From positions 62,001 to 126,000 of IMG/VR virus record IMGVR_UViG_3300022866_000322: 64,000 nt of DNA; one strand, written 5' to 3'. Below the pieces are notes generated by a model. The model had not been told where the DNA came from, did not search any database, and saw nothing but the letters and a program-made list of their open reading frames with translations. Position 1 is the stretch's first letter. Every line of letters starts with the position of its first letter. The translations under genes and the position numbers were made by a program. Below are positions 17,301 to 60,035 of the stretch, piece by piece.

Positions 17301-17824
17301 TCAACGACGGTTGGGTCCGCGGTGATGGTACAACATTCATATATGGATATTTAGAAAAACAGTCAGGATTAAGTTCTGTAAACCAGCGGGGCGGAGTGTG
17401 GCAAATAACATACGAAACAATACCAGATGAAGGTTTTGACGAATCGATAGGGTTTGATGAAACTATACCTGGTTTTGAACATTCAAGACTGGATGCAGGT
17501 AGTGACCAAGAAATAAGATTAGAGTTTATAAGCGAAATATTTGTAAATCAAACAGTAAAAGTTCGCGGCGGTCGAACATACCCATCGTCTACATTACAAT
17601 ATACATTTGATGGAGGAGAGGCTACACCAACTTTCTTAGTGTTTTCAGAGGCGCAAGGAACTGAAACAACATTTGATGGTGGCAGTATGACTAGCAAAGA
17701 AGGAGATCCTACTGTAGGAGGTGTTCGTGGGGGCACAGCTTTCAGTAATAATAGAGACAAATATATGGAACCTGAAACAGAGGATAAATATATCAAGTTC
17801 CCACAGAATGGAGTATTTGTATAA
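14303..17824 (+). CDS. Large baseplate/tail structural protein with Ig-like repeats
   Basis: Four GxLPxG...G.L.G repeats (GELPGG, GDLPPG, GLPIG, RIPQG); starts immediately after the upstream stop (TAA-ATG). Confidence 0.7.
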   Translation: MSTITWVTAKGDLGTIPESQYFKLQLSATDSDSQPLTYSLIAGELPGGMYITRAGEFRGAPTILSAVNQSKAYSFTARASNDDGDVADRSFTLTVSNAVGPQIFPRPDLIGAFFDGEFLSYQFVTINDNPSATATYKVVQGDLPPGTTLSSTGLLSGYVDIIAANIDDLGYEAAAYETIIFDALPESTDKYFNFRVEVTDGGKFDTVDVRTLIVSKSNFTADNDITVVNNTFITIDHDNRYRPIILNAPDSLPARVAGDTLAYKFLAYDPEAKDVQWEVAELAFSGLDQLDTPVIQTLNGDGSTGPYTLDTAAAAVDISVRINDTIYLPTIDYTTSGTNLTFTSLTPSASDVITVLYIAPGTGFDSLLFDQGAEGLPIGLTINRDTGWLFGTLPTQTEETKTYNVSVRAFRELDPGVKSDPVVFSITVQRTLNEQIIWNTNENLGIMDNGAVSKLSISAYNTLGKELEYSTVYQPYRRIPQGLKVLSTGNLVGRVSFRYFSLDAAVGYLPVTSTTDLEVGMSVQGIGVAAGCKITAIVDSKTVEVQPAIYVVQGTLLTFSNDTTTKVRSTTSNAITTAIDSGTTTFDQNCRFTVKATTRDGTSSATKSFRVFIKSRNLAPYENLYLKALPDNTERRSYVNTVTNPSFVPPANVYRPDDAYFGIQKNIKFLFSAGLSVAQASEMVSTIALNHYTKSINFGAIKTARALDSSGNVEYEVVYADIIDNQMFAGNSPPLSTTLTNTNPYIQNGVEYGNTIYTNSFTNMQKRLETGLGYTNSGALPRWMTSVQTNGKVLGLIRAVPLVYTNPGASELIAYRLRNSGFTLNTIPFTVDRYQWDNSLSKFFDTTTNKFLPSRDTTFDKLVDLNAGTDVITTSVVGSVTNANAIVVSDNLKIGYGWTLSSVDTLSSGIDDNVFITNVQENVGSQNLTLSANITASAGAGIKFNGTASVDYAVSKSFNSIDSELLSRVKLLGLIDGVTNIQPFEKIIFAKQFGFDTEAVNDGWVRGDGTTFIYGYLEKQSGLSSVNQRGGVWQITYETIPDEGFDESIGFDETIPGFEHSRLDAGSDQEIRLEFISEIFVNQTVKVRGGRTYPSSTLQYTFDGGEATPTFLVFSEAQGTETTFDGGSMTSKEGDPTVGGVRGGTAFSNNRDKYMEPETEDKYIKFPQNGVFV

Positions 17825-24573: not shown

Positions 24574-25091
24574 ATTCACTTTATATCGATATGGACGGTG
24601 TGGTCGCAGACTTTGACCGTTATGCACATCAAAAACTAGGAATTGGACCTAGTGAAGGGAAATACCCACAAAACGTGTGGAAAGTACTGATAGAGAACCC
24701 TAGACTATATAGGGATTTAAAACCCACTCCTTATGCTACAGAATTATACGATTTGTGCCACAAAACAGCAAAAAAACTAGACTATAGGGTCGCTTTTTTA
24801 ACTGCTATACCCAGGAAGAATGATGTACAGTACGCTATGTATGATAAGGTAAACTGGGTCCAAAAGAATTTTCCAGACACTCCTGTGTTCTTTGGACCTT
24901 ATAGTAGAGACAAACAGAATCATTGTCGTACTGGTGACATCTTAATTGACGATAGATCAGATAACATTCAAGAATGGAAAGACGCGGGTGGTGTTGGGAT
25001 ACTGCACAAGGACTACGACGTCACTGTTAAAAAACTAAAAGGTTTTGTGGACTTTCATGCACATTTGCCACAAGTCTCGTTGCAACTGTAG
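24570..25091 (+). CDS. HAD-family 5'(3')-deoxyribonucleotidase-like
   Basis: YIDMDGVVADF, FLTA, ILIDDR, AGGVGILH. Confidence 0.88.
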   Translation: MNSLYIDMDGVVADFDRYAHQKLGIGPSEGKYPQNVWKVLIENPRLYRDLKPTPYATELYDLCHKTAKKLDYRVAFLTAIPRKNDVQYAMYDKVNWVQKNFPDTPVFFGPYSRDKQNHCRTGDILIDDRSDNIQEWKDAGGVGILHKDYDVTVKKLKGFVDFHAHLPQVSLQL

Positions 25092-26050
25092 ATCCTACCT
25101 TCTTTAATAGAGTCTATCTTCCAGGACTCTTCAATTTTTATAAACCAGTTAATTGCATTTTCTATGCCAATCTCATTAGCATTATTATTTTCTAATATTT
25201 TTCTTAACTGAACGTTACTAGGATTGCCTGTGTTGTTACGTGGATAAAACCCTAACCAACAACATGGGTATACTTCCCCGGTTGCTGTTATGTATATTTC
25301 GTTATTATTTTTTGCATGACAGTCAATTATAGGTTTTGTAACTGTTTCGGTTAGTGTAATCTCTGGCAGATCGGTATAGTAAACATGTTGTGCATACAAT
25401 TCGTCGAAGTCTGTCGAATCACGATAATCACCAAGCACATGACTTAATTTACCTTCTCTGTTGAATACTGGTCCTACATTGCGGCCAGCATCAGCCACCC
25501 AAAAATGTGCAAAGCCCATATCGTTTGCTAAGGTTTCAGCTAACTCACGTTGATGGACATTATGATCAAATGGGATCCACGCCCACACAGCACGGCCACC
25601 TGCTGATATAAACTTTTTGGCGTTTTCTAATATCAAGTTAAAGTCTGTATATTGTCTGTACAAGTGATGTGTGTCAGCCAACCCATCAATTCTAAAATCA
25701 ACAGTAACACCCAGTTCACCCAATCGAGTCCACCAATTTGGACGACCACTGGCATTGGTACTGATTTCTATTCTCAGTTTTGGATTTGTTTCTTTAAAGT
25801 ATTCAACAATAGCAAGTCCATCACGTGCGGTTATGAAGTCACCATAGTTGCCGTTGATTAACACATTATCTATTTGTTGTAGAAATTGCGGGGTGAAGAT
25901 TGTTTTGGCTTGTACCAAAGTCATATCTGTCACAGGGTAGGTATCTATTATGTCAACCCCGTGAAAGTTACGGGGGCATTCTGGGCAAGCGGCGTTGCAC
26001 CTGGTTGATATTTCCAGGTGCAAACTCCGTATATCTTTATATTCAATCAT
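25055..26050 (-). CDS. Radical SAM protein with C-terminal SPASM/twitch-like domain
   Basis: CNAACPEC, NGNYGD, STNAS, IDG; C-terminal GEVYPCCW...CNETCG; ATAAATA 6 nt upstream on the minus strand. Confidence 0.85.
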   Translation of the reverse strand: MIEYKDIRSLHLEISTRCNAACPECPRNFHGVDIIDTYPVTDMTLVQAKTIFTPQFLQQIDNVLINGNYGDFITARDGLAIVEYFKETNPKLRIEISTNASGRPNWWTRLGELGVTVDFRIDGLADTHHLYRQYTDFNLILENAKKFISAGGRAVWAWIPFDHNVHQRELAETLANDMGFAHFWVADAGRNVGPVFNREGKLSHVLGDYRDSTDFDELYAQHVYYTDLPEITLTETVTKPIIDCHAKNNNEIYITATGEVYPCCWLGFYPRNNTGNPSNVQLRKILENNNANEIGIENAINWFIKIEESWKIDSIKEGRIYSCNETCGKCA

Positions 26051-26923: not shown

Positions 26924-27448
26924 TCACTCACTTGTCCAGACTGCATAGATTCTATTCTTATATCCACTGTCTCGTTTACACACTTCTACACGATAGCCCC
27001 ATTGCGGCGCCATTAGATAGTGATCTACTTCACGCCAAGGATAAAACTGTATCTGGTATTGCATTTGGTTATTGTGGTCGTAGTTGCCAGGATTACACCG
27101 CCAGTATATTCTGGACTTGGGTTTCATTAGCCGCATGATTCTGCCAATCTGATATTCTACCACAGTTTTATCGCCAAAGTTTAAACTGCCCAAACAGAAT
27201 GCAACATCAAAGCGTTGATCTGTATCAAAGAATTCTATTTGTTCTTTGTGGTCTGCGGCATCATTTGCAGGGTCAATACCCACTATGTTTTTAATTAGGT
27301 CTTTGTATGGATGATATCCGCAACCTACGTCAAGTACCCATTCATCGGCTTGTATTTCATTTGCCAAGTTAAAACCTGTTTCACCAAAGCCTGATGTGCT
27401 GGGTTTCCAAACTGACGCAAAATATTCGTTAAGTAATTTTTGATTCAT
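26924..27448 (-). CDS. Class I SAM-dependent methyltransferase
   Basis: VLDVGCG, VGIDP, FDVAFCLGSL. Start probably ATG 27448 (track gives 27454). Confidence 0.8.
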   Translation of the reverse strand: MNQKLLNEYFASVWKPSTSGFGETGFNLANEIQADEWVLDVGCGYHPYKDLIKNIVGIDPANDAADHKEQIEFFDTDQRFDVAFCLGSLNFGDKTVVEYQIGRIMRLMKPKSRIYWRCNPGNYDHNNQMQYQIQFYPWREVDHYLMAPQWGYRVEVCKRDSGYKNRIYAVWTSE

Positions 27449-27476
27449 TGACAATCCTTGATAATTACAGTATACT
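27448..27476 (+). promoter_or_regulatory. sigma70 promoter, probably giving a leaderless mRNA
   Basis: TTGACA, 17 nt, TATACT; ATG 27483 lies 7 nt after the -10 element. Confidence 0.75.
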
Positions 27477-27482
27477 TATATT

Positions 27483-28067
27483 ATGATAATACCTGAACAC
27501 ATATTCTTTACTGGTGTACCCGGATCCCGTTGGAGTGGTATAGCACAAACTATTGAAACCATACCTGGATTTAATACCAGTGACCGTACCCCAGAACGAT
27601 CATACGACCATCATGCTTACAGTGGGCACAAAGGTGCATACTTTGGCAAGGGCATGGAGTTTGACGCTAATCTTAATAGAGGTATAGACTACATAAACCA
27701 AGCGTGGCCAGAACCCGGAGGCCACAAGTTAGTTAAGAGTCATAACTGGGCGTATTTTGCAAGATGGCTTAAAATTAACCATCCGCACAGTTGGGTAATG
27801 CTGGTATATAGATCAGACTTAGCCAGTTACACTTGGTGGCACGAAGCAGGTGGCTTCCAGATAAAGTACCCTTGCTACGATTGGTACGAAAACAGTGCTA
27901 AGATGATGATGGAAATACAGAAACAAAATACAGGTATCTTAGAATATGCATACGAAGCAGGTGCAACATGGGAATACTTTACTCCAGACTGGATTGAACG
28001 TGAGTTTGGACATGCTGTTGACGTTCCTACTATACACAAAGACATATTGGTAACTATAATAAAATGA
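27483..28067 (+). CDS. Hypothetical protein, P-loop/sulfotransferase-like
   Basis: FFTGVPGSRWSGIA N-terminus; LVKSH; VMLVYR. Confidence 0.55.
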   Translation: MIIPEHIFFTGVPGSRWSGIAQTIETIPGFNTSDRTPERSYDHHAYSGHKGAYFGKGMEFDANLNRGIDYINQAWPEPGGHKLVKSHNWAYFARWLKINHPHSWVMLVYRSDLASYTWWHEAGGFQIKYPCYDWYENSAKMMMEIQKQNTGILEYAYEAGATWEYFTPDWIEREFGHAVDVPTIHKDILVTIIK

Positions 28068-28600
28068 TTTTTAAAACAAGTAAGGAACTTATTGTTAATC
28101 CAACACAAGGGTTGTATAAATGGGCAAAGATCTTCAACAGGTTACAAAGAAGATTCTTTGAAGGGCAATACGATCAATTGCGTAGAGAAAGGCAAATACA
28201 CGACTTTCTGTACCTAAACGAATACACGAAACCTCATTACATAACGGATACTGATGTATTTGTAAATGACCCCAAGTACGACATAGATGAAGCAGACATT
28301 ATTGTAATTACAGATCAGAAGTTCAGCAGATCTCCATGTCCTGCTATTGTGGACAATGTTAAAAATCTATTAGATCGGTGTCCGCTGTACTTGTGTCTTA
28401 ATAGATGCTATGTGAACATTGACGACAGTTACCACGACACTACACTAGACTCTAACTTTACGTTGGCAATAACACAGTGGTTAAAGAAATCGCTTGATGC
28501 AGACATCACGGATTTAAGTTTAAACTATGTGGATTACGGAAATGCCTTTACTTGGGCTGTTCCTGACAGACACTATTTTATAAGAAAGCGCAATGCCTAA
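28064..28600 (+). CDS. Hypothetical protein
   Basis: ATGA-coupled ORF in operon. Confidence 0.7.
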   Translation: MIFKTSKELIVNPTQGLYKWAKIFNRLQRRFFEGQYDQLRRERQIHDFLYLNEYTKPHYITDTDVFVNDPKYDIDEADIIVITDQKFSRSPCPAIVDNVKNLLDRCPLYLCLNRCYVNIDDSYHDTTLDSNFTLAITQWLKKSLDADITDLSLNYVDYGNAFTWAVPDRHYFIRKRNA

Positions 28601-29282
28601 ATTACTAGAGTTCTTTGAAGAACAACCAATAAAGTCAGATTGGCGTACACAGTATATTAGATATAGACTGGGGCGTCTGAAACATCAGTATTGGCTATGG
28701 AATCGAAAGAATCCAAGCAAGGCATTGATCGACGAGTATGATTATGCTATACTAGAAAACTGTCAGCCGGGCACTACAGTGTTTTTTGCGAGTTCTGGAT
28801 ACTACTTGAAAGACATATACCCAGAGATCGAAGTTGTAGAAATGCACCCAGTAGTAAAAACATTTTATCCGTCTGTGCATATCTGCAGTGATAGAGACAA
28901 TTTAGAAAATTTATCTATACGTGCAGATAACTTTGCTGTAGTGAACAACCGAGGCGATATATGGACAGAAGCGCACAACATAGCAAAGTATTGTAAGCAG
29001 TACACAAAGATAATGAATCCTGGCTGTAGATTTTTTTACAGTTTTAGAGACACACAAGTATCGGATATCAACAGGTTAACAATTAACTTAGAAGATTACT
29101 TTCTTGATTGGGCACAGAATGTCGCAAAAGATAACGATATGCAATTAGTTTGGCACAATATTGATTTTAGAAAGAAACAAGCTCAACCTGACGGCAGTTA
29201 TGATGCTTTAGAAAATCCAGATACCACAAACGGAAATTTAAAGTTTTGGTTTGTGTATAAAGGGGAACCATGGAAAATGTAA
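28593..29282 (+). CDS. Hypothetical protein (possible degenerate methyltransferase fold)
   Basis: Coupled ORF; IMNPGCRFFYSF resembles the LkPGG motif of methyltransferases. Confidence 0.55.
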   Translation: MPKLLEFFEEQPIKSDWRTQYIRYRLGRLKHQYWLWNRKNPSKALIDEYDYAILENCQPGTTVFFASSGYYLKDIYPEIEVVEMHPVVKTFYPSVHICSDRDNLENLSIRADNFAVVNNRGDIWTEAHNIAKYCKQYTKIMNPGCRFFYSFRDTQVSDINRLTINLEDYFLDWAQNVAKDNDMQLVWHNIDFRKKQAQPDGSYDALENPDTTNGNLKFWFVYKGEPWKM

Positions 29283-29815
29283 CAACCTATTTTATTGTAG
29301 CATACGCTGGCGGCACTGCTGGCGATTTGATCACAGCATTACTGAATCCTACGGATGTGCAGTTAGATGGTGCCAGGGTGATAGTCCCAGATCATAGAAT
29401 AAAATTAAAAAAGCCAGGTAGATTTCAAGATGACGTAGCCAAAGATAAGTATATACAAGAGTTTAAGAACACAGTTAGTTTATCAAGTCACGATCTAGAA
29501 TACCATATCAGAAATCATCACCCATTCATTGGCATAACTGTCAGGTATAAATTAGCATACTGGGCTGCCAACCGATTTAAAGAATTGCATAGCGATCGTA
29601 TATGGGAACAGTTAGGAAACGGTACAGTAGAAGACTATGCCGAAGATTTGCTTGATATCAGTAAATCGTTGATTACAAAAAATGCAAGTCATGTTTTACA
29701 GTTGGAAGATATCGCGAATGGCTTAGCCATCGAAAAACTAAGAGAGTTTTCTACAATACCAAAACAGTCAGAAGAATTTTATGATTCCTGGTTGCAAGCG
29801 AACGGATTCAAATGA
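29270..29815 (+). CDS. Hypothetical protein, P-loop/sulfotransferase-like
   Basis: IVAYAGGTAGDLITALL N-terminus; LSSHD. Confidence 0.55.
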   Translation: MENVTTYFIVAYAGGTAGDLITALLNPTDVQLDGARVIVPDHRIKLKKPGRFQDDVAKDKYIQEFKNTVSLSSHDLEYHIRNHHPFIGITVRYKLAYWAANRFKELHSDRIWEQLGNGTVEDYAEDLLDISKSLITKNASHVLQLEDIANGLAIEKLREFSTIPKQSEEFYDSWLQANGFK

Positions 29816-30045
29816 AAAGAGATCACATTTGGTACATTAAATACGCTAGTGCAATTGTAATACTAATTGCAATGGTTTTCCATGTTAACGGTTGGACACC
29901 CTGGAACAGTTTTTTACAACTGGTGGGTGCGTGTGGGTGGATGTACGTTGGGTACCGTTGGCGGGAGTGGTCAATGTTATTGAACTTTATACCACAAATT
30001 TTTATAATAATTCCAATATTAACATACACGTACTACTTTAAGTAA
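29812..30045 (+). CDS. Small membrane protein (about 3 TM)
   Basis: Hydrophobic, Trp-rich; similar in type to 939-1163. Confidence 0.7.
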   Translation: MKRDHIWYIKYASAIVILIAMVFHVNGWTPWNSFLQLVGACGWMYVGYRWREWSMLLNFIPQIFIIIPILTYTYYFK

Positions 30046-30054
30046 GGATTTGCA

Positions 30055-30729
30055 ATGGCTGCAATGCTACACGTTAAAAATGAATTTGTTACACAAGACC
30101 GTTGGCCGTTAAAGCTAACTAAATTAGAACCCAATGAACAGCGTAGTTTTCCTGCAACCGACGGAACATACTATGTGCTACTACGTAATGCCACGTACCT
30201 AAGTAACGATGCAGTCTTTTATCACGTTATGGGAGCGTTTGGAGTTAACAACGAATTTACCATCGAGTGCAATCAAGATAGTCACGCCGTGGTAATAGAG
30301 TACAAAGGCATACACTTATTAGAAAATCGTTACTACCTGCAAAATGATCTCGGTGTTGGAAATTTAAGTTACATGGATGGTGGTACAAATACTACAGCAG
30401 TTAACCCTAGTAGGCTAGGAGATCCTGTAGTTAACTACGTGCATTTCCCAAACAAAATGTATCAAACACTGCATACACATCCTAGTCATCGTATCGGACT
30501 GATACTGCGTGGCAGTGGTCATATTGAGTTAGATAATGACGAAATATTTGATATCGAAACAGGAGATGTTTTTTGGATGCCACGCAATACACTGCACAAC
30601 TTCTGCTGTCAAAAAGGTGAGCATGTTGAGTTATTTGTATTTGCACCCGATTCAGGCACAGGCCCAACAGACGAAGTTAATCCATTAAAAATTAGGACCT
30701 ACGTTGGACAGCAACGCTATGCAAAATAA
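30055..30729 (+). CDS. Cupin-domain protein
   Basis: QTLHTHPSHRIGLILRGSG and GDVFWMPRNTLHNF metal-binding cupin motifs. Confidence 0.8.
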   Translation: MAAMLHVKNEFVTQDRWPLKLTKLEPNEQRSFPATDGTYYVLLRNATYLSNDAVFYHVMGAFGVNNEFTIECNQDSHAVVIEYKGIHLLENRYYLQNDLGVGNLSYMDGGTNTTAVNPSRLGDPVVNYVHFPNKMYQTLHTHPSHRIGLILRGSGHIELDNDEIFDIETGDVFWMPRNTLHNFCCQKGEHVELFVFAPDSGTGPTDEVNPLKIRTYVGQQRYAK

Positions 30730-31423
30730 AAAATTATTAATAACCACGGGCCCGCAAGGGTCAGGCAACCACTTGTTTGGCAGACTGTTGAGTCTACATC
30801 CTGATGTCGAAGGGTGGGAAGAACTGGTAGACAAGTACTGGGTACCAAGTGACTTAGAGCCGTTTGCTGAATACTGGGTCTACCCAGAAAGACTTACAGC
30901 AGAAAAGTTTACAGGCAAGAACTATTTCCTTGCTAATGTTAGTTGCCCGTTTATGTATGATGGTGTACGCTATGTGCCTAAAATATTAGAAGTTGCTGAC
31001 CGTAGCCGTGAACTAGGTGTAGATGTTGAAATTGCTATTATTGTGCGTGATCAAAACATAAATGCTGAACAGCAAAAACGTGTGCGTGGAGAAGTAACAA
31101 CACCTATAGCACAGGACTACTACTACAACACGCTACTTGCAAGTGACCACAGTGTGCATTTTTTAGACCACGAAGCATTTTTCCTGCACAAACAGCATTA
31201 CTTGAAGTGGATCAGTAAAATTTTAAACTTCCCTGTCGAAGTTAATCAAAATAAGATAAATAAATTTATAGATACAGATGCAAACCACAAGTACGTGAAG
31301 TATGTACAAGAATATTGGTTAGATCAAGAAGTATGGTCAGGCATCCAATCTAAATCTTCCCGTGGCTTAAACCAAAAAAACATAAATAATATTGTATCGA
31401 TACAGAGGAGTATACAAAAATGA
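30719..31423 (+). CDS. P-loop/sulfotransferase-like protein
   Basis: LITTGPQGSGNHLFGRLLSLHP; IIVRD. Start moved to ATG 30719. Confidence 0.6.
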   Translation: MQNKKLLITTGPQGSGNHLFGRLLSLHPDVEGWEELVDKYWVPSDLEPFAEYWVYPERLTAEKFTGKNYFLANVSCPFMYDGVRYVPKILEVADRSRELGVDVEIAIIVRDQNINAEQQKRVRGEVTTPIAQDYYYNTLLASDHSVHFLDHEAFFLHKQHYLKWISKILNFPVEVNQNKINKFIDTDANHKYVKYVQEYWLDQEVWSGIQSKSSRGLNQKNINNIVSIQRSIQK

Positions 31424-32115
31424 ACGCAAAGAAATTCGTAGAAGACATTGTTGCTGACAACCAAGCACTTTTCCGTGCTAGTCAACTCAACGTTAAGTCC
31501 TACTTTGACAGCAAGCCAGATCAGTCTGAATTAGTAGAACATTTCATCGGTCGTATGGTTAACGAGCGTATGAACATGGTAGAAATTGCTCAACAGGTTG
31601 CTAACATGCCTGCTGATGCAGATGCAGAAGAACTACAACTTTTAACAAAACAAGCTCACGATGAAGCTGTACACTTTAAACTAGTTAAAGATGTTATTGA
31701 GCACATCACAGGCGAAGAGTTAGACGTTAACGCCGCTATTGCCGCTGAACAAGCAAAGCCAACTGCTAAAGGTGCAAGCCTTTTAGCTAAGTATGGTGCT
31801 GACACAGATCCAGCCGCTCTTGCTGCCTATCAGTTAGTAGCTGAAGGTCGTGCAGAAGCAGTTTGGGACCAAATGGCAGATTCAATTGAAGACGAATTCA
31901 TCTCAAGTGCATACGCAAAAATTGCACGTGACGAAGGATTCCACGCAACAATTGGAGCACGTAAGTTGGCGTCATTGGCTGGTAGCGATGACGAGCAAGC
32001 ACGTATTTTAGGCTTAGTTGCTGAAATGCGTAAAGACCTTTATCAAGTAAGTTGCTTAAACACAACTCCTACAGAAGAAGGTCGTCAACTTGTAGCAGAC
32101 GCTTACGGTTGGTAA
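31420..32115 (+). CDS. Ferritin-like di-iron protein
   Basis: Two ExxH motifs (DEAVH, DEGFH) plus upstream Glu helices (ERMNMVE, EGRA); ATAAATA at 31382 and strong GAGGAG SD. Confidence 0.8.
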   Translation: MNAKKFVEDIVADNQALFRASQLNVKSYFDSKPDQSELVEHFIGRMVNERMNMVEIAQQVANMPADADAEELQLLTKQAHDEAVHFKLVKDVIEHITGEELDVNAAIAAEQAKPTAKGASLLAKYGADTDPAALAAYQLVAEGRAEAVWDQMADSIEDEFISSAYAKIARDEGFHATIGARKLASLAGSDDEQARILGLVAEMRKDLYQVSCLNTTPTEEGRQLVADAYGW

Positions 32116-32116
32116 T

Positions 32117-32674
32117 ATGCGTATAGGACTTAGTCAAAGAGTCCTGTTGCACAAAAATAGAGCGTATGATTCACTAGATCAAGGTTGGTACCGATATCTA
32201 AAGGATCATACGCTCTTTGCTGTCCCAAATAATCCAGATCAATTAGACTTTGGGAAACTTTCAAAAGAACTAGATGCTTTTATTATCACAGGCGGTGATG
32301 ATAGCACAGTTCGTAGAGTGACAGAGACCAGATTAGCCACACACATGTTAGCCAAACATAAACCTATAATAGGTATATGCCATGGAGCCTTCTTGCTAAC
32401 AGAATTAATGGGCGGAAAGTTAATGGAAGTAGAGCAACATACAGACACAGAGCATGTTGTTAACTACTTTGGTGACTTAAAAACAGTAAACAGTTTCCAC
32501 TCTTGGGGAATAGTAGAACCGCACAACACAGCGACCACATTAGTAACAGACTTGAATGGCAATTGCGAAGCATGGATAGACAACAGAGCACCATTAGCTG
32601 GAATAGTATGGCACCCAGAGCGTATGCAAGATCCTTGGATTCCAGACGAGATATCTACATTTTTTAATATATGA
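32117..32674 (+). CDS. Class I glutamine amidotransferase-like hydrolase (peptidase C26; Cj1417-like)
   Basis: IGLSQRV, ITGGDD, IGICHGA (Cys nucleophile), VNSFH, WHPER. Confidence 0.85.
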   Translation: MRIGLSQRVLLHKNRAYDSLDQGWYRYLKDHTLFAVPNNPDQLDFGKLSKELDAFIITGGDDSTVRRVTETRLATHMLAKHKPIIGICHGAFLLTELMGGKLMEVEQHTDTEHVVNYFGDLKTVNSFHSWGIVEPHNTATTLVTDLNGNCEAWIDNRAPLAGIVWHPERMQDPWIPDEISTFFNI

Positions 32675-33669
32675 ATATAGAAATAGATTTTATTGGGGGG
32701 ACCCATGGCCATTATCTATCATTTTTAATTAATAAATTATTGTTGGGTGATAAAATACCAATGGATCATCCTTTTACTGATTTAGGAACAGCACACAGTT
32801 TCAGCGATCTAAATATGCTTGTCGCATGCGGCCATTGGAGTGCGCCTAATTTAAACAAAAAGCAATGGTGGGTTGAAGGCAAACCACTCACCTTAAGTGA
32901 CAATATTATTAGAATAACAGTTGAGGAAGAGGATCAACTGCCTATTATTCAACTTCAGTTTCACAGAGGTGGTGATAGGGGGTGCGACCCAGCTTTCTTA
33001 CAAACCAATACCTATCATAAATTAAAAGGGAGAAAAATAGGGTTAGGTGATACTATGCTCGCAGATATTAATATAATGTATAACAACGTTGATTATAATA
33101 ACGCCGACACTGTTTTTTCTGCTGACTGCTGGGAGGATGCGCTAACGCAAGAGGGTAAATTATTTTGTCTAGACAAACAAAACCCTGATTGCCCTAAGAA
33201 CATATTAAGGGATTATTTTAAAAACATGTTTAATCAAATAACACCCACAAATCATAATAATGGGTTTCAAAAATGCTTAAGAATATACAACCCTGCCTGG
33301 CCCAATTTGGCTGGCAAAAATATATATCATCTACCATATCAAAGTTTCTATGATCAAACTAAGTTTATAGCAGAAATTAACAAGATTAAAGAATACTTTA
33401 ATTTAAATTTTAAAAGTTTTAATATAGAAAACTTACACACTACTTTTCTTAATAAACAACCGTATAAGGATAGCAAGGAAAAGGTTGCAATAATAATAAG
33501 CAACATACTACAAAACAAAGACTACAAGATACATGAGTTAGATGTTATTCATGAAGGCTATATTAACAGCCAAATTGAAAAATTAATTAAGATAAAATTG
33601 CCCATAGGCCCTGTTAATTTCCCCACAACTGTTAACAACCTAGTAAAACAATACAGGCTAAATAAGTAG
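32671..33669 (+). CDS. Hypothetical protein, P-loop/sulfotransferase-like N-terminus
   Basis: IDFIGGTHGHYLSFLINKLL. Confidence 0.55.
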   Translation: MNIEIDFIGGTHGHYLSFLINKLLLGDKIPMDHPFTDLGTAHSFSDLNMLVACGHWSAPNLNKKQWWVEGKPLTLSDNIIRITVEEEDQLPIIQLQFHRGGDRGCDPAFLQTNTYHKLKGRKIGLGDTMLADINIMYNNVDYNNADTVFSADCWEDALTQEGKLFCLDKQNPDCPKNILRDYFKNMFNQITPTNHNNGFQKCLRIYNPAWPNLAGKNIYHLPYQSFYDQTKFIAEINKIKEYFNLNFKSFNIENLHTTFLNKQPYKDSKEKVAIIISNILQNKDYKIHELDVIHEGYINSQIEKLIKIKLPIGPVNFPTTVNNLVKQYRLNK

Positions 33670-34809: not shown

Positions 34810-35691
34810 ATGATTGATTTAGTCACGGTGGTCTATCGACTTGAGATATCTCTCCTTGAGTTACAAGCCAAATCCATTGACACATACTTCGAAGATAACT
34901 TCATAAACAGTATAACTGTTGTTGTGAACGACAACGACAGTGTTTGTGATCTAATAGACAAGTCGTGGTGGGGGAAGTATAAACACATAGTAACAATAGT
35001 TCCTTATTCTGTTTACGGATACACATGTAGGATAAACGGATGGGAGAATCAACAGTTGTGTAAACTATTATCTGTTTCACGTTGCTTGATGCCGTGGGTT
35101 ATAATATTAGATGCTAAGACACTGTTTGTTAAGCCTTGCACATCTCAGCTTATGTTTACTGGCGATAAATGTAATTCACGTCTAATAAACATATTTCCTC
35201 AATTTGTAGAAGCACAACAATCTTTAGAAAAGATGTTTGATATATCTTTTACAAAAGCAATCGGACCTGGTGGTGTTCCGTTTGTAATGCACACCGATAC
35301 TGTTAGAAGTATGATCGCATACATAGAGTCAAATTTTGAAACAACATTTGATGACTTTTTCCAAACCAAATGCAGATACCCGGACTTAATTACTGAATTT
35401 TATCTTTATTCAGCTTATGTACAATATCGATACGGAAATAGTACTTTGCTTTATTCTAACACACAAGACTGGGATTGCGTAAATTTGGCAGACTGGCAGG
35501 TCGACGAATTTGATAGAATATATCACGAAATGAGTTTGCCTACAACATTAACGGTATCAGTACATGCACAAGCATGGAATCTATTATCACAGCAACAAAA
35601 GTTCCTATACCTCGAACTACTAGAATCTAAAAAAATAATAAATGACCCCAAACACACCCTTGATAAACTAAATACAGTTGTTATCAATTAA
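34810..35691 (+). CDS. GT-A glycosyltransferase-like protein
   Basis: DLVTVVY...WENQQLCKL...IILDAKTLFV (DxD-like position), TEFYLYSAY. Confidence 0.6.
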   Translation: MIDLVTVVYRLEISLLELQAKSIDTYFEDNFINSITVVVNDNDSVCDLIDKSWWGKYKHIVTIVPYSVYGYTCRINGWENQQLCKLLSVSRCLMPWVIILDAKTLFVKPCTSQLMFTGDKCNSRLINIFPQFVEAQQSLEKMFDISFTKAIGPGGVPFVMHTDTVRSMIAYIESNFETTFDDFFQTKCRYPDLITEFYLYSAYVQYRYGNSTLLYSNTQDWDCVNLADWQVDEFDRIYHEMSLPTTLTVSVHAQAWNLLSQQQKFLYLELLESKKIINDPKHTLDKLNTVVIN

Positions 35692-40676: not shown

Positions 40677-42944
40677 ATGTTACAAACAAATCCTGAAATA
40701 GACTATGTAGTACAAGAAGCAACAAAACTAGCAAAGAGCTACGAGCATGAATACATCACAGTAGAACATGTAATGTTAGCCATGATTAGATACGAGCCGC
40801 TATGCGTTCTGTTTGAAAAATCTCAAATCGATGTAAAAACAATAGATGCAGATTTAAGCCTTTATATTTCTGAACAAGAAGATTTAGTGGTCCAAGGTTG
40901 TGAACCAAGAAAAACACATGCGCTCGAAAGAGTATTTAACAGAGCTTTGACTCAACTATTGTTTAGCGGGCGCACACAGCTACAGTTAATGGACTTGCTG
41001 TTAAGTATACAATCAGAAACAAATAGTTTTGCACAGTACTTTGCTGTAAAGCACGGGCTGACACGTGAAAAAATGTTAGAACTGTTTGCACTTGTTAATG
41101 CAGATGGCGAAAATAAGAAAGTAGTTAATGCAAGCAAAGCAGAAAGAATTTTAGAACACTATTGTGACAACCTTAACAAAAAGGTAGCAGAAGGAAAGAT
41201 AGACCCTGTCATTGGCAGAGAATTTGAGACAAACGAGATCATAGAAGTTATGGCTCGTAAGAATAAAAATAATGTGTTACTAATTGGAGATCCGGGTGTA
41301 GGCAAGACTGCAATTGCAGAAGGGCTTGCACTAGCAATCGAAGCAAATACTGTTCCGGAGTTCTTACAAGGTTACGTTGTTTACAATCTTGACATAGGCT
41401 CGTTGCTTGCTGGTAGCAGGTACAGAGGAGACTTTGAAGAAAAAGTACAAGAAGTTATTAAAGCCTTAACTGTTAAAGGGAAGGCAATACTGTTCATTGA
41501 TGAAGCACACCAAATGAAAGGTGCAGGCTCTACAGGGGCAAACGCAAGTGTAGATTTCAGTAACATGATAAAGCCTGCGATCGGCAAAGGCAAGATCAAA
41601 GTAATGGCTTCTACAACGTGGGAAGAGTATTCAAATAGTTTCGAAAAGGATCGTGCATTGATGCGCAGATTCCAGCGTATTACTGTTGATGAGCCTACAG
41701 CAGAAGTAGCAAAAGAAATACTTACAGGGCTGAAAAGTGTATTTGAAAAGTTCCATGGTGGTACAGTAACAAATGCTTCAATTGATGCGGCCGTTGATCT
41801 TAGTGTCAGATACCAAACAGATAAAAAACTGCCAGACAAGGCAATTGATTTAATCGACAGCACATGTGCCAGGTTAAAACTTAGCACTGCTATTTGGACA
41901 GTTACTAGAGCTGATATTATTGACAGCATTGCTAAGATGACTAAGATTCCTGCTGACCAAATTGGAAACCAGAAAGCAATTGTCAACTTCGAAGCGATTA
42001 TAAAAGAAAAACTGTACGGACAGGATCAAGCAGTTGACACTGTATTGGAAAAAATATATGTAAGTAGAGCTGGCTTGAAAGCAATTAACAAGCCCGTTGG
42101 TAGTTTCTTGTTTACAGGACCAACAGGCACAGGCAAAACAGAACTTGCTAAACTGTTAGCAGAAAACCTAGGCATGAAGTTATTACGTTACGACATGAGC
42201 GAATACCAAGAACGTCACACTGTAGCAAAGTTAGTTGGCGCACCTCCAGGGTACGTAGGCTACGATGACGGAAACTTAGGTGGTGGTATGCTTATTAGTG
42301 ATATCGAAAAGAATCCAAACAGTGTTATATTAATGGATGAGATAGAAAAAGCACATCCAGACGTTACTAATGTGCTATTGCAGATGATGGATGAAGGAAT
42401 GATTACCTCAAGCAACGGTAAGAAAGCAAATTGTCGTAACACAGTTATTATCCTTACCAGTAACCTGGGTGCCGCAGACAACGAAAATAACACAATAGGC
42501 TTTGGTGACGAACTACAAAAAACAGGCGAGGATGACAAAGCAGTTAAGAAGTACTTTGCTCCTGAATTTAGGAATAGACTAGACGGGACTGTGAAGTTCA
42601 AGAAACTTGACGAACTAAGCATGCGTAAGATCGTAACAAAGTATCTAGTAGAAATTAATGATTTACTACTAGATAAAAATCTAAAGGTTAAACTTACAGA
42701 ACCAGCAATAGGTGAACTTGTTGAACAAGGATTTGATCCCAAGATGGGAGCAAGGCCATTGCAACGCAAAATGAACGAAGAAATAAAAGTTCCATTGAGT
42801 AAAAAAATGTTGTTTGAGCCCATTGTGCCCGGTAGCATTATAACTGTAGACTTTCGAGATGATAAATTTACCTTTATTGTAGACTCACCAGAAAACACAA
42901 CACACAAAGTAGACGATGATGGATTTATTATACTGGAAGAATAG
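40677..42944 (+). CDS. clpA: ATP-dependent Clp protease ATP-binding subunit ClpA
   Basis: N-domain HEYITVEH; GDPGVGKT and GPTGTGKT Walker A motifs; IGF loop (NTIGFG); GARPLQR. Confidence 0.92.
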   Translation: MLQTNPEIDYVVQEATKLAKSYEHEYITVEHVMLAMIRYEPLCVLFEKSQIDVKTIDADLSLYISEQEDLVVQGCEPRKTHALERVFNRALTQLLFSGRTQLQLMDLLLSIQSETNSFAQYFAVKHGLTREKMLELFALVNADGENKKVVNASKAERILEHYCDNLNKKVAEGKIDPVIGREFETNEIIEVMARKNKNNVLLIGDPGVGKTAIAEGLALAIEANTVPEFLQGYVVYNLDIGSLLAGSRYRGDFEEKVQEVIKALTVKGKAILFIDEAHQMKGAGSTGANASVDFSNMIKPAIGKGKIKVMASTTWEEYSNSFEKDRALMRRFQRITVDEPTAEVAKEILTGLKSVFEKFHGGTVTNASIDAAVDLSVRYQTDKKLPDKAIDLIDSTCARLKLSTAIWTVTRADIIDSIAKMTKIPADQIGNQKAIVNFEAIIKEKLYGQDQAVDTVLEKIYVSRAGLKAINKPVGSFLFTGPTGTGKTELAKLLAENLGMKLLRYDMSEYQERHTVAKLVGAPPGYVGYDDGNLGGGMLISDIEKNPNSVILMDEIEKAHPDVTNVLLQMMDEGMITSSNGKKANCRNTVIILTSNLGAADNENNTIGFGDELQKTGEDDKAVKKYFAPEFRNRLDGTVKFKKLDELSMRKIVTKYLVEINDLLLDKNLKVKLTEPAIGELVEQGFDPKMGARPLQRKMNEEIKVPLSKKMLFEPIVPGSIITVDFRDDKFTFIVDSPENTTHKVDDDGFIILEE

Positions 42945-58469: not shown

Positions 58470-60035
58470 ATGTTATTAGATCTTCTCCGGAAGGTATATG
58501 ATTTTGATATGACCGTAGCGTTAGAAACCATTGCGACTATGCCTTCTTCTTTTTTATACAAAAAGATAAGTCCATTTATTAAACAACAATATCCTAACAA
58601 CTACAAGTTCATATTTTTGAACAACAGTGATGTCAACCAAGAAGTATTACTGCACGTTATACAAACAATAGAATTGTGTAAGATTCCTAATGCATTTGTA
58701 TTGGTCATTACTAATCAAACCAGAGTGCATGATTTTTTTGCAAGTAATAACATTGAAGTTAAAAAAAATAATATTCCTGACGAACTAGAAACAGGGAATT
58801 ACACACCAACTTTTAATGTCCAAGAGAAACTTTGTCCTTATCCGTGGGCTGGCATTCATGTAGAGCCACAAGGTTACGTTAAGCCGTGCTGTGATTTTTA
58901 TGGTTCATACTTAAAGCATAACGGTACTCTATTGGATGCTAGTAAAGATTCGTTTGAATACATGCAAAATTCAAGCGACATGAAATTGATAAGGGAACAG
59001 TTTAGACAAGGCATAAAGCCAGAAGGATGTAAGAAGAACTGTTTAGATGCGCCAGAGGGCAAATCTACCAGGTTTACGCATTCAAAGTACAAGCTGAACA
59101 ATGTATACGGAGAAATAGACTGGGAAGGCGAAGGTGAGATGAAGTTTCTTAACGGACACTTCAGTAACTTGTGCAACCTCGGTTGTGTGATTTGTGAACC
59201 GCGATCTAGTTCGATACTGTCTGTAGAGGAACTTAAAGATTCACAGTACGCCAACATTAAACAAGATCCACGATATAAAAAGTTACAAATCCATCTAAAC
59301 ACATTAGACGAAAACAGCACTATATGGAAAGAACTGGATAAAAATATTTCAACTATACGTAACTTTGAAATATTGGGTGGCGAACCACTGCTAAATAAAA
59401 ATATCTTACGAGTCATCGAAAGATTAATTGATTCAGGGCATAGTAAACATTGTGTTTTTCAAATTATAACCAATGGTACACAATTCCCTGATATATGCAA
59501 CCAGTTACATCACTTTAAAGAGGTATTCATACACATAAGTGTAGACAACACAAACGAGCGATTTGAATATGAACGCTATTTGGGAAAATGGGATAAGTGG
59601 GTAAGTAACGTAAGCCAATTTGATAATTTAACAAAACAACACAATCATATTAAATTACATTTTGCAATAGCAGTAAGTATTTTAAATGCATTGTACTTGC
59701 CAGAACTGTTATCGCATATTTCAAGATACAACTACCAAACATTTTACTTTGGTGATGTACATAAACCGTCTCAGTTATCGTTGAACAACTTGACATTAGA
59801 AGCAAAAGATGTTCTAATAGAAAGACTATCAATGTTTACTGATCAATATCCAAAACTAAATTTTGTGCTGAACTTACTAAAAAATTCTAAACAAGTTGAT
59901 GGAACAGAATTTTGTAACTTTATACAAAACAAAGATAAATTACGAAATTTAAACTTTATGGATACGCATGAGGAAATAGGAAATCTTATGGGATATTCAT
60001 CTTTTAACATTCAAGGAGAAACAAATGGCCGCTAG
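58470..60035 (+). CDS. Radical SAM protein with N-terminal extension and twitch-like domain
   Basis: CPYPW...VKPCC...GCKKNC, CNLGCVIC, LGGEPLL, ITNGT. Confidence 0.85.
   Translation: MLLDLLRKVYDFDMTVALETIATMPSSFLYKKISPFIKQQYPNNYKFIFLNNSDVNQEVLLHVIQTIELCKIPNAFVLVITNQTRVHDFFASNNIEVKKNNIPDELETGNYTPTFNVQEKLCPYPWAGIHVEPQGYVKPCCDFYGSYLKHNGTLLDASKDSFEYMQNSSDMKLIREQFRQGIKPEGCKKNCLDAPEGKSTRFTHSKYKLNNVYGEIDWEGEGEMKFLNGHFSNLCNLGCVICEPRSSSILSVEELKDSQYANIKQDPRYKKLQIHLNTLDENSTIWKELDKNISTIRNFEILGGEPLLNKNILRVIERLIDSGHSKHCVFQIITNGTQFPDICNQLHHFKEVFIHISVDNTNERFEYERYLGKWDKWVSNVSQFDNLTKQHNHIKLHFAIAVSILNALYLPELLSHISRYNYQTFYFGDVHKPSQLSLNNLTLEAKDVLIERLSMFTDQYPKLNFVLNLLKNSKQVDGTEFCNFIQNKDKLRNLNFMDTHEEIGNLMGYSSFNIQGETNGR

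What the first reader, a model, noticed from the sequence alone, without database searches (positions are those of the whole stretch)
30055..32674. Cupin, P-loop, ferritin-like di-iron and amidohydrolase block: a candidate small biosynthetic pathway
Seen: four tightly coupled enzyme genes; the di-iron gene has its own late motif and a strong SD. The amidohydrolase (IGLSQR, GGDD, GICHG, NSFH, WHPER) looks to me like Campylobacter Cj1417. Established: Cj1417 is the gamma-glutamyl-CDP-amidate hydrolase of O-methyl phosphoramidate capsule modification. Inference: an undescribed route to an N- or P-N-containing modification using oxygenase chemistry plus glutamine-derived nitrogen. The Cj1418-type kinase is not in this window.
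Basis: partly seen in the sequence, partly recalled or inferred. Interest (0 to 1): 0.6.

Follow-up and report, generated by a model that had tools for sequence, protein, structure and literature searches.

The report
Phage-only di-iron/glutamyl-hydrolase/sulfotransferase enzyme module
The four genes are real and are part of a conserved enzyme cluster of unknown product, found in more than 200 uncultivated giant-phage contigs but in no sequenced isolate; it only partly resembles the Campylobacter phosphoramidate pathway.

Summary
The window is part of a 221 kb uncultivated giant-phage genome, about 63% complete, seen in salt-lake metagenomes. The four ORFs exist as described and are translationally coupled inside a longer + strand chain (27483-33669).

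- **Cupin (30055):** a Cupin_2 protein with invariant His ligands.
- **"P-loop" gene (30719):** not a P-loop NTPase. It has a PAPS-sulfotransferase fold with an atypical donor loop.
- **Di-iron gene (31420):** an orphan, almost virus-only ferritin-like di-iron protein. It carries an invariant E / ExxH / E / ExxH set and is 66-77% identical across at least 224 viral contigs.
- **Amidohydrolase (32117):** a peptidase-C26 gamma-glutamyl hydrolase with an invariant Cys-His-Glu triad. It groups with a Cj1417-like clade, away from E. coli PuuD, but scores far below the Cj1417 equivalog cut-off.

Co-occurrence is strong. Of 66 distinct di-iron loci, 61 carry the hydrolase, 60 a divergent methyltransferase-like gene, 55 a second sulfotransferase-like gene, 44 the sulfotransferase-fold gene and 17 the cupin. 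An APS-kinase-like gene lies elsewhere in this genome.

The Cj1418-type glutamine kinase and the Cj1416-type cytidylyltransferase are absent from five related phage genomes. It is therefore an undescribed modification module, not a MeOPN pathway. Its product is unknown.

The parts
26924..27454 (-). Class-I SAM-methyltransferase-like gene (motif VLDVGCGY), divergently oriented. It is present in 60 of 66 distinct related loci, usually divergent from the di-iron gene.
   Evidence: There are only sub-threshold matches to methyltransferases in the PDB profile search, so the family call rests on the motif and weak hits.
27483..28067 (+). Second sulfotransferase-like gene ('STa', loop GxPGS[RK]WS). 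Present in 55 of 66 loci.
   Evidence: Four of 8 family members hit Pfam Sulfotransfer_3, best E 3e-4. Its Atlas feature neighbours are viral clusters carrying Sulfotransfer_1/3 at score 0.95. Synteny.
28064..29815 (+). Three coupled ORFs of unknown family (28064-28600, 28593-29282, 29270-29815). They are specific to this phage and its near-identical contigs; the third has rare paralogues next to the module in L037.
   Evidence: (no Pfam or PHROG hits).
29812..30045 (+). Small DUF6552 membrane protein, found beside the module in 11-14 related loci.
   Evidence: Pfam DUF6552 at 39.8 bits against a cut-off of 27.
30055..30729 (+). Cupin: an N-terminal domain of unknown fold plus a C-terminal Cupin_2 barrel. 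H140, H142, H145 and H181 are invariant, as is the tail PDSGTGPTD..NPLK.RTY.GQQR. Present in 17 of 66 loci, and in 16 of those 17 directly upstream of and overlapping the next gene.
30719..31423 (+). Its invariant loop is GPQGxGNH (GPQGSGNH in the window); R110-D111 are also invariant. The likely start is the ATG at 30719; an upstream in-frame TTG at 30704 is the alternative. Present in 44 of 66 loci, often as two tandem paralogues.
   Evidence: AlphaFold model pLDDT 88.3. The top 13 VIA hits are all PAPS sulfotransferases, Z 9.5-12.0. Foldseek best hit TPST1, E 1.8e-5. Collinear weak profile hits to TPST. No Pfam hit.
31420..32115 (+). Ferritin-like di-iron protein ('FER'). It is the most conserved gene of the module. 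Invariant E49, E82-x-x-H85, E142/E146 and E172-x-x-H175 lie on four long helices.
   Evidence: (pLDDT 91.7).
32117..32674 (+). Peptidase-C26 / class-I GATase-fold gamma-glutamyl hydrolase ('GAT'). The triad C88, H166, E168 is invariant. Present in 61 of 66 loci, and within 30 nt of FER in at least 37.
32671..33669 (+). 332-aa ORF of unknown fold, coupled to GAT by an ATGA overlap. It belongs to a family ('f48') found beside the module in 8 of 66 loci. A paralogue lies at G000:200659-201534.

Best explanation
The block is part of a conserved, phage-specific enzyme module that builds or attaches a small chemical modification.

Invariant core (shown by synteny):
- a ferritin-like di-iron protein (FER);
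- next to it, a stand-alone C26-type gamma-glutamyl-amide hydrolase (GAT) from a clade that joins a Cj1417-like clade;
- a divergently transcribed methyltransferase-like gene;
- one to three sulfotransferase-fold proteins (PL, STa).

Variable parts: the cupin fused in register to PL; a protein with an HxD...H motif; a TctC/TctA-type solute-uptake component; and an APS-kinase-like domain, alone or joined to a cytidylyltransferase-fold domain.

Most likely chemistry (inferred from family membership, not shown):
1. GAT hydrolyses the gamma-glutamyl amide bond of a glutamine-derived or gamma-glutamyl-masked conjugate. This releases glutamate and an amine or amidate nitrogen.
2. FER activates O2 to oxidise the same substrate.
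3. The cupin adds further metal-dependent chemistry.
4. The methyltransferase caps the product.
5. The sulfotransferase-fold proteins move a sulfuryl- or phosphoryl-type group from a 3'-phosphonucleotide donor (PAPS or an analogue) onto the product or onto a macromolecular acceptor.

It works partly like the Campylobacter MeOPN route: a Cj1417-like hydrolase, an APS-kinase-like kinase, methyltransferases and a PAPS-like donor logic. It is not that pathway.
For: The genome is a phage. It has a T4-type DNA polymerase and virion proteins, it is an IMG/VR record, and the nearest isolates are giant phages at 42-50% polymerase identity.

Co-occurrence:
- FER occurs in at least 224 viral contigs at 66-77% identity.
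- Of 66 distinct FER loci: GAT 61, MT 60, STa 55, HxD...H protein 50, PL 44, TctC 29, APSK-like 23, cupin 17. The cupin is adjacent to PL in 16 of 17.
- Gene order is shuffled between loci. GAT can lie before FER, or TctC or the PL paralogues can be inserted between them, yet the genes stay clustered. This argues for selection on linkage.

Enzyme identities:
- GAT: Pfam C26 and GATase above cut-off, invariant triad. NF045546 is the best NCBIfam hit. Tree support 99/97 with the Cj1417-like clade.
- FER: pLDDT 91.7. VIA Z 13-16.7 to di-iron oxygenases and oxidases of the HO-like and ferritin-like classes (CADD, HrmI, UndA, BesC, ADO-type, PaaC, R2, MMOH), alongside non-metal TenA-family proteins of the same fold. 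Ligand set invariant in 24 sequences.
- PL: sulfotransferase fold.
- STa: Sulfotransfer_3 hits.
- APS_kinase Pfam hit at 35.7 bits against a cut-off of 21.1, plus an NMNAT/cytidylyltransferase-like C-terminal domain, in the module of relatives. In this genome the two are split at G000:148771-149856.

Possible expression: near-identical short contigs confined to FER occur in two RNA libraries, and contigs of relatives cover cupin to GAT in a third. This is suggestive only.
Against: - No substrate, product or acceptor is known.
- All loci come from one phage lineage, so part of the synteny is inherited.
- FER has no characterised relative. Only 106 clusters matched among 1.84 billion representatives, and there is no PDB sequence match.
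- PL lacks the catalytic Lys/Arg of the sulfotransferase 5'-phosphosulfate loop, so it may use another donor or be non-catalytic.
- The APS-kinase-like gene is adjacent in only about a third of loci and lies 55 kb away here. Its nucleotidyltransferase-like partner was not found in the 98%-complete relative.
- A glutamine kinase and a gamma-glutamyl ligase were not found.
- The methyltransferase call rests on a motif and sub-threshold hits.
Confidence: 0.4

Rival explanations
1. It is a true phosphoramidate (MeOPN-like) pathway. A nucleotide-activated glutamine conjugate is hydrolysed by GAT to an NDP-amidate and 3'-phosphorylated by the APS-kinase-like enzyme. The phosphoramidate is then transferred by the sulfotransferase-fold proteins and O-methylated. 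The first steps are supplied by the host or by non-orthologous phage enzymes.
For: - GAT's best family is NF045546, and it joins the Cj1417-like clade.
- A bona fide Cj1418/1417/1416/1415-like cluster in a Pelagibacteraceae contig holds the nearest non-phage-like relative returned by a motif-limited scan of genome contigs.
- APS-kinase-like and cytidylyltransferase-fold domains occur in the module of relatives and in this genome.
- The MeOPN donor, CDP-phosphoramidate 3'-phosphate, is a PAPS analogue (PMC11800397). That would suit a sulfotransferase fold with an altered donor loop.
- A methyltransferase-like gene is always present.
Against: - The Cj1418-type kinase family NF004508 is absent from this record and four relatives, one of them 98% complete.
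- No Cj1416-type NTP-transferase was found.
- GAT scores 64.9 bits against the 250-bit equivalog cut-off.
- The APS-kinase-like protein is only 22% identical (E 0.08) to the Cj1415-like kinase.
- FER, the cupin and the HxD...H protein have no role in the known pathway.
Confidence: 0.12
2. FER and GAT form one two-subunit enzyme. GAT is a glutaminase that channels ammonia to the di-iron site, or unmasks nitrogen there. The result is an O2-dependent amination or N-oxygenation, which would be a new kind of glutamine-dependent di-iron enzyme.
For: - FER and GAT are adjacent with 1-5 nt spacing in most loci and stay together when the order changes.
- GAT is a minimal 185-aa class-I GATase fold with an intact triad.
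- FER's best structural matches include CADD (pABA synthase) and the N-oxygenase HrmI, and AurF-like clusters are among the closest non-viral matches in the Atlas structure search.
Against: - GAT belongs to the C26 branch. On established knowledge of PuuD and Cj1417, the characterised members of that branch are stand-alone hydrolases.
- In several loci other genes lie between FER and GAT.
- The complex prediction could not be run.
- FER's ligand set is 4 carboxylates plus 2 His, not that of CADD.
Confidence: 0.15
3. It is not a pathway. The genes are functionally unrelated neighbours in a densely packed phage genome, kept together by shared ancestry. FER would be a stand-alone di-iron protein, GAT a general gamma-glutamyl hydrolase, and the sulfotransferases would be separate host-modifying enzymes.
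For: - Tight coupling extends over at least 10 genes, including ORFs specific to this phage.
- All comparison loci belong to one lineage, with FER 66-77% identical.
- The cupin and PL are missing near FER in many loci, and the kinase lies elsewhere in this genome.
Against: - The cluster persists despite many rearrangements, insertions and changes of orientation.
- Flanking genes (PhoH, virion proteins, lysin) vary in position.
- Cupin-PL adjacency (16 of 17) and FER-GAT presence (61 of 66) are higher than for the flanking genes PhoH and the two virion proteins, which are near FER in fewer than half of the loci.
Confidence: 0.2

Closest known systems
Campylobacter jejuni MeOPN donor pathway (Cj1415-Cj1418; NCBIfam NF045546 for Cj1417)
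   Same: - A small C26-type hydrolase with a Cys-His-Glu triad that groups with Cj1417-like proteins.
- An APS-kinase-fold kinase in the same genome.
- Associated methyltransferase-like genes.
- The logic of a 3'-phosphonucleotide (PAPS-like) donor.
   Different: - No Cj1418-type glutamine kinase and no Cj1416-type NTP-transferase in five phage genomes.
- GAT scores far below the equivalog cut-off.
- The kinase is only distantly similar.
- It adds a di-iron protein, a cupin and sulfotransferase-fold proteins, none of them among the assigned steps of the MeOPN route (Cj1415-Cj1418 for the donor, Cj1421/Cj1422 for transfer).
- It is in a phage, not a capsule locus.
PuuD / peptidase C26 gamma-glutamyl-amide hydrolases (E. 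coli putrescine pathway)
   Same: - Same fold and triad.
- Many family-wide residues are shared: R66, H113, N125-S126, H128, E151, W165.
- Stand-alone hydrolase architecture.
   Different: - PuuD is about 70 residues longer and falls outside the phage plus Cj1417-like clade.
- No PuuA-type gamma-glutamyl ligase is nearby.
Ferritin-like and heme-oxygenase-like di-iron oxygenases (ADO, PaaA/C, R2/R2lox, AurF; CADD, UndA, BesC, HrmI)
   Same: - Helical bundle with Z 13-16.7.
- An E / ExxH / E / ExxH ligand set on four helices, as in ferritin-like di-iron carboxylate proteins.
   Different: - No significant sequence match to any solved or curated family.
- A family of only about 100 clusters at 50% identity, almost all viral.
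- Always paired with a C26 hydrolase.
- The ligand set differs from the 3-His/3-carboxylate set of HO-like di-iron enzymes (from my own knowledge).
PAPS-dependent sulfotransferases (TPST1/2, OLS/CurM ST domain, NDST, 3-OST)
   Same: Overall fold, with a strand-loop-helix at the N-terminus and an RD motif after strand 4. Structural matches Z 9.5-12.
   Different: - The donor loop is GPQGSGNH, with Gly where TPST has its catalytic Arg.
- No Pfam sulfotransferase hit for PL.
- About 230 aa with a distinct C-terminal helical tail.
- Preceded by, and overlapping, a cupin gene.

Membership tests
Cj1417 gamma-glutamyl-CDP-amidate hydrolase (NF045546) | Class-I GATase / peptidase C26 fold with a Cys-His-Glu triad | tested here: met
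   PF07722 at 44.7 bits (cut-off 20.5) and PF00117 at 40.2 bits (cut-off 22.8). C88, H166 and E168 are invariant in 24 sequences.
Cj1417 gamma-glutamyl-CDP-amidate hydrolase (NF045546) | Score at or above the curated equivalog cut-off (250 bits) | tested here: not met
   64.9 bits, E 1e-17, covering model positions 3-183 of 198. It is still the best NCBIfam family by about 30 bits.
Cj1417 gamma-glutamyl-CDP-amidate hydrolase (NF045546) | Groups with Cj1417-type proteins rather than with PuuD or classical amidotransferase subunits | tested here: met
   IQ-TREE: phage clade 100/100. It joins the Cj1417-like marine clade at 99/97, apart from E. coli PuuD, GuaA-N, PabA and HisH. Caveats: sampling is limited, the phage stem is long, and Campylobacter Cj1417 itself was not in the tree.
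Cj1417 gamma-glutamyl-CDP-amidate hydrolase (NF045546) | Genomic partnership with Cj1418-type L-glutamine kinase and Cj1416-type cytidylyltransferase | tested here: not met
   NF004508 was found in 0 of 5 phage genomes, including one 98% complete. The NTP-transferase of the Pelagibacteraceae cluster also had no match in the five (that search had no positive control).
Cj1417 gamma-glutamyl-CDP-amidate hydrolase (NF045546) | Partnership with a Cj1415-type (APS-kinase-fold) kinase | tested here: inconclusive
   An APS_kinase-fold ORF lies at G000:149380-149856(-), outside the window. It is inside the module in 23 of 66 loci. It is only 22% identical (E 0.08) to the Cj1415-like kinase of L096.
Cj1417 gamma-glutamyl-CDP-amidate hydrolase (NF045546) | Hydrolysis of CDP-L-glutamine to cytidine diphosphoramidate plus glutamate | not testable with these tools
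   Needs an enzyme assay.
PuuD-type gamma-glutamyl-GABA hydrolase | Clusters with PuuD and is associated with a PuuA-type ligase | tested here: not met
   PuuD falls with the outgroups. No PuuD model appears among the 18 NCBIfam hits. No ligase was seen in the loci.
Ferritin-like di-iron carboxylate proteins | Four-helix core carrying E ... ExxH ... E ... ExxH | tested here: met
   E49, E82/H85, E142 (and E146) and E172/H175 are invariant. They lie on helices 35-62, 69-97, 131-155 and 159-186 of a model with pLDDT 91.7. VIA Z 13-15.7 to ADO-type proteins, PaaC, R2, MMOH and R2lox.
Ferritin-like di-iron carboxylate proteins | Significant match to a curated family model | tested here: not met
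   Ferritin_2 at 16.0 bits (cut-off 24.7), PaaA_PaaC at 15.2 bits (cut-off 28.5), R2lox E 0.017. No PDB profile hit.
Heme-oxygenase-like di-iron oxidases (CADD, UndA, BesC) | HO-like fold | tested here: inconclusive
   CADD Z 16.7, UndA Z 14.8, Foldseek TM 0.68. These are tied with the ferritin-like hits. The ligand pattern fits the ferritin-like class; the HO-like ligand set was recalled from memory and not tested.
   The invariant loop is GPQGxGNH (GPQGSGNH in the window), with no lysine. Kinase structures rank below the sulfotransferases.
PAPS-dependent sulfotransferases | Sulfotransferase fold | tested here: met
   The top 13 VIA matches are all sulfotransferases, Z 9.5-12.0, with 159-180 residues aligned. 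Foldseek best hit TPST1, E 1.8e-5.
PAPS-dependent sulfotransferases | Catalytic Lys/Arg in the 5'-phosphosulfate-binding loop | tested here: not met
   The HMMER alignment to TPST places PL's G at the position of the Arg in TPST's loop GVPRSGTT. That this Arg is the catalytic residue comes from my own knowledge. Q13-G14 are invariant.
Cupin superfamily | Cupin_2 barrel with conserved metal-binding His residues | tested here: met
   PF07883 at 33.8 bits (cut-off 27.2). H140, H142, H145 and H181 are invariant in 16 sequences.

The most novel reading that the evidence does not exclude
Giant phages of saline and marine waters carry a self-contained pathway that makes a previously unseen modification. 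The modification would be an N-oxidised, methylated and sulfated or phosphoramidated group derived from glutamine nitrogen, placed on the virion, the host envelope, DNA or a secreted metabolite. The FER-GAT pair would be a new glutamine-dependent di-iron enzyme, and the altered sulfotransferase fold would use a non-PAPS 3'-phosphonucleotide donor.
Probability: 0.15. Interest if true: 0.85.

Novelty: new variant of a known kind. Interest (0 to 1): 0.58.

Why it matters
Each enzyme belongs to a known superfamily. This combination was not found in any of the 50,697 GenBank phage records or in the papers I searched. The di-iron protein is an orphan family that is almost virus-only yet extremely conserved, at about 70% identity across more than 200 contigs. 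That degree of conservation indicates a function under strong selection in an abundant group of uncultivated giant phages. The role of phage sulfotransferases is openly described as unclear (PMC10580990).

If the module makes a new modification or metabolite, it would add a new class of phage auxiliary chemistry. It might also add a new di-iron reaction and a new use of the sulfotransferase fold. If it turns out to be a MeOPN-like route, it would be the first in a virus and would point to a non-Cj1418 way of making the P-N bond.

Tried and rejected
- **DNA and protein searches of 50,697 GenBank phage records** with the block, FER and GAT found nothing. No isolate can therefore be used as a model.
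- **PHROGs** found no family for the cupin, PL or FER.
- **Guessing neighbouring NCBIfam accessions** for Cj1415/1416/1418 (NF045545, NF045547) hit unrelated families. I dropped this route.
- **hhalign among the module's families** (PL, STa, f48, f66, the HxD...H protein, the cupin and others) gave no pair above 20% probability. The idea that the unknown ORFs are further PL paralogues is unsupported.
- **PDB profile searches** for STa and the HxD...H protein found nothing, and Pfam found nothing for the HxD...H protein. Its reading as a 2OG/Fe oxygenase rests on a motif only, and I do not rely on it.
- **Contexts of remote FER relatives** were uninformative. One lies among amino-acid permease, aminotransferase and M20 peptidase genes of a 3.7 Mb chromosome, one lies in a phage-like contig, and the others lie on short contigs.
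There is no evidence either way.
- **T4-type late promoter:** the canonical motif is absent from the block.
- **FER as a CADD/pABA-synthase orthologue:** rejected because the ligand pattern differs.
- **The APS-kinase plus NMNAT-like protein as a NadR-like NAD salvage enzyme:** not excluded. The AAA_28 hit is weak (E 0.009) and APS_kinase is stronger.


Full report
**What the window is**

The window is G000:C1:62001-126000 of a 221,342-base IMG/VR virus record. CheckV estimates the record to be 63% complete. It encodes a T4-type DNA polymerase, virion proteins, an endolysin, PhoH and two radical-SAM proteins. The polymerase's nearest isolates are giant phages: Sinorhizobium phage Phosso at 50%, Agrobacterium phage Atu_ph07 at 43%, and 121Q-like Escherichia phages at 42%. 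Near-identical DNA occurs in 16 salt-lake metagenome runs, any of which may be the source.

**The observation**

- The second gene most likely starts at the ATG at 30719, which overlaps the cupin's last 11 nt.
- The second and third genes share an ATGA at 31420-31423.
- The third and fourth genes are 1 nt apart.
- The fourth gene shares an ATGA with a fifth ORF at 32671.

A GAGGAG Shine-Dalgarno sequence lies 9 nt before the di-iron gene's ATG. The 'late motif' is only CATAAATA at 31381-31388. The canonical TATAAATA is absent from the region and is not enriched in the window, and I counted ATAAATA only 8 times on the + strand. The tight coupling is not special to these four genes, because it runs from 27483 to 33669.

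**The four proteins**

*Cupin (30055-30729).* It passes the Cupin_2 cut-off. H140, H142, H145 and H181 are invariant in 16 homologues, as is a striking C-terminal tail. PDB profile hits are generic cupins.

*The 'P-loop' gene (PL, 30719-31423).* It has no Pfam, PHROG or NCBIfam hit. Its invariant loop is GPQGxGNH (GPQGSGNH in the window), which lacks a Walker lysine. An AlphaFold model (pLDDT 88.3) matches PAPS sulfotransferases first: the top 13 VIA hits have Z 9.5-12.0, and Foldseek gives TPST1 at E 1.8e-5. P-loop kinases rank lower. A weak collinear profile match to TPST places a glycine at the position of the Arg in TPST's donor loop; from my own knowledge that Arg is TPST's catalytic residue. 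PL is therefore sulfotransferase-fold with an atypical donor loop.

*The di-iron gene (FER, 31420-32115).* It has only sub-threshold hits to Ferritin_2, PaaA/PaaC and R2lox and none to PDB sequences. In 24 homologues, 92 positions are invariant, including E49, E82xxH85, E142/E146 and E172xxH175. In a model with pLDDT 91.7 these residues sit on four long helices. Structural matches are tied between two classes:
- heme-oxygenase-like di-iron enzymes (CADD Z 16.7, HrmI, UndA, BesC, FlcD);
- ferritin-like enzymes (ADO-type proteins, PaaC, R2, MMOH, R2lox; Z 13-15.7).

Non-metal TenA-family proteins of the same fold score in the same range. The ligand pattern is that of the ferritin-like class. A profile search of 1.84 billion representatives found only 106 clusters, and the Atlas neighbours are 95-100% viral. 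FER is an orphan, nearly virus-only family.

*The amidohydrolase (GAT, 32117-32674).*
- It passes the Peptidase_C26 and GATase cut-offs.
- C88, H166 and E168 are invariant.
- Its best NCBIfam family is the Cj1417 family NF045546. The score is 64.9 bits, E 1e-17, covering nearly the full length. The next family scores 34 bits and no PuuD model is listed, but the equivalog cut-off is 250 bits.

A motif-limited scan of genome contigs returned three loci. Two are close relatives of the phage gene in MAG contigs. The third is a Pelagibacteraceae contig (L096) whose GATase scores 131 bits on NF045546. It sits between a 769-aa PEP-utiliser-type protein (NF004508, 773 bits against a cut-off of 501) on one side and an NTP-transferase and an APS-kinase-fold gene on the other. 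That gene set is Cj1418/1417/1416/1415-like. The window GAT is 29% identical to this GATase (E 1e-21).

In a maximum-likelihood tree the phage GATs form one clade (100/100) on a long stem. That clade joins the Cj1417-like marine clade (99/97), apart from E. coli PuuD, GuaA-N, PabA and HisH. Many shared residues are general to the C26 family and occur in PuuD too. Only H108, I132 and R169 are shared specifically with the Cj1417-like set.

**Co-occurrence**

FER was found in at least 224 viral contigs, and 80 loci were fetched. After collapsing to 66 distinct FER sequences, I counted the module genes within about 6 kb of FER. Some loci are truncated, so these are lower bounds.

| Gene near FER | Loci (of 66) |
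|---|---|
| GAT | 61 |
| Methyltransferase-like gene (window 26924-27454, - strand) | 60 |
| Second sulfotransferase-like gene STa (window 27483-28067) | 55 |
| Protein with an HxD...H motif | 50 |
| PL | 44 |
| TctC-type solute-binding protein | 29 |
| APS-kinase-like protein (fused to a cytidylyltransferase-fold domain in the full-length members examined) | 23 |
| Cupin | 17 |
| TctA permease | 9 |

STa has Pfam Sulfotransfer_3 hits in 4 of 8 members, and its Atlas neighbours carry sulfotransferase families. The cupin lies directly before PL in 16 of its 17 loci.

Gene order varies between loci. GAT can precede FER, or TctC or the PL paralogues can lie between them. The genes still stay clustered while the flanking genes change.

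**The rest of this genome**
- APS-kinase-like and cytidylyltransferase-like ORFs lie at G000:148771-149856 (- strand). They sit next to an SGNH-like gene, a NodU-type carbamoyltransferase and a dCMP deaminase.
- The HxD...H protein lies at G000:24147-24674.
- The Cj1418-type kinase family is absent from this record and from four relatives, one of them 98% complete.
- The NTP-transferase of the L096 cluster has no match in the five genomes either.
- The phage APS-kinase-like protein is only 22% identical to the Cj1415-like kinase.
- In the 98%-complete relative only the kinase domain was found, far from FER.

**Interpretation**

Shown:
- a conserved phage-specific cluster;
- the folds and catalytic residues of the four proteins;
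- the position of GAT relative to the sampled Cj1417-like set and to E. coli PuuD;
- the absence of Cj1418-type and Cj1416-type genes.

Inferred:
- GAT hydrolyses a gamma-glutamyl amide, as its characterised C26 relatives do.
- FER and the cupin carry out O2- or metal-dependent steps.
- The methyltransferase-like protein and the sulfotransferase-fold proteins decorate or transfer the product using a 3'-phosphonucleotide donor.

The MeOPN pathway (Cj1415-1418 make CDP-phosphoramidate 3'-phosphate from glutamine, ATP and CTP; PMC11800397) is the closest described logic. Two of its four defining enzymes are missing, however, and three conserved phage enzymes have no counterpart in it.

A null reading, in which the genes are unrelated neighbours, keeps about 0.2.

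**Expression**

In RNA libraries kept as contigs, two runs hold near-identical short contigs confined to FER. A third holds contigs of relatives, mostly below 90% identity, covering the cupin through the fifth ORF. These libraries can contain DNA, so this is only suggestive.

**Restrictions**

No alternative genetic code was needed.

Noticed in passing
L014, L018, L020, L028 and others (e.g. L067:1269-2243; L073:7246-8700 and 8697-9764): Related phages insert a signal-peptide-bearing TctC-type solute-binding protein (Pfam TctC, E 2e-16) directly after GAT. Others insert a full TctA permease (283.8 bits) followed by a second signal-peptide-like ORF that has no Pfam hit. These look like phage-encoded parts of a tripartite tricarboxylate uptake system. 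None is present in this genome.
   Followed up: partly
G000:C1:147925-151341 (L091), outside the window: A cluster on the - strand holds a dCMP deaminase-like ORF, a cytidylyltransferase/NMNAT-like ORF, an APS-kinase-like ORF, an SGNH-like ORF and the C-terminal part of a NodU-type carbamoyltransferase (130 bits). A carbamoyltransferase next to nucleotide enzymes might point to a DNA or sugar modification.
   Followed up: partly
window 25055-26050 (-) and 58470-60035 (+): There are two radical-SAM proteins. The first has a SPASM domain, as in peptide or cofactor maturases, and lies just upstream of PhoH and the module. It recurs near the module in several relatives.
   Followed up: no
window 34810-35691 (+): A DUF6492 protein (37.4 bits against a cut-off of 22.9) follows the two virion proteins. 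It recurs in L016 and L080.
   Followed up: no
window 40677-42944 (+): A 755-aa ATP-dependent protease with two AAA domains (phrog_4871, E 1e-238).
   Followed up: no
window 7072-12309 and 14303-17824 (+): Very long ORFs of 1745 and 1173 aa. The 654-aa ORF between them (12338-14302) matches structural and tail-fibre PHROGs.
   Followed up: no
window 31408-31969: In two metatranscriptome runs, one marine and one aquatic, the only near-identical contigs on the 3.9 kb stretch fall inside the di-iron gene. This could mean a high transcript level for that gene or a closely related phage in seawater.
   Followed up: partly
L096 (Pelagibacteraceae single-cell genome contig CACPOD010000026.1): A compact Cj1418/1417/1416/1415-like gene set follows a sulfatase/phosphotransferase-like ORF. 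MeOPN-type donor synthesis may therefore exist in SAR11-type marine bacteria.
   Followed up: partly
L094 and L095: Contigs carrying close relatives of the phage GAT (75% and 60% identity) are filed in MAGs of Nitrosopumilaceae and Chitinophagaceae. These are probably phage contigs mis-binned into those genomes.
   Followed up: no
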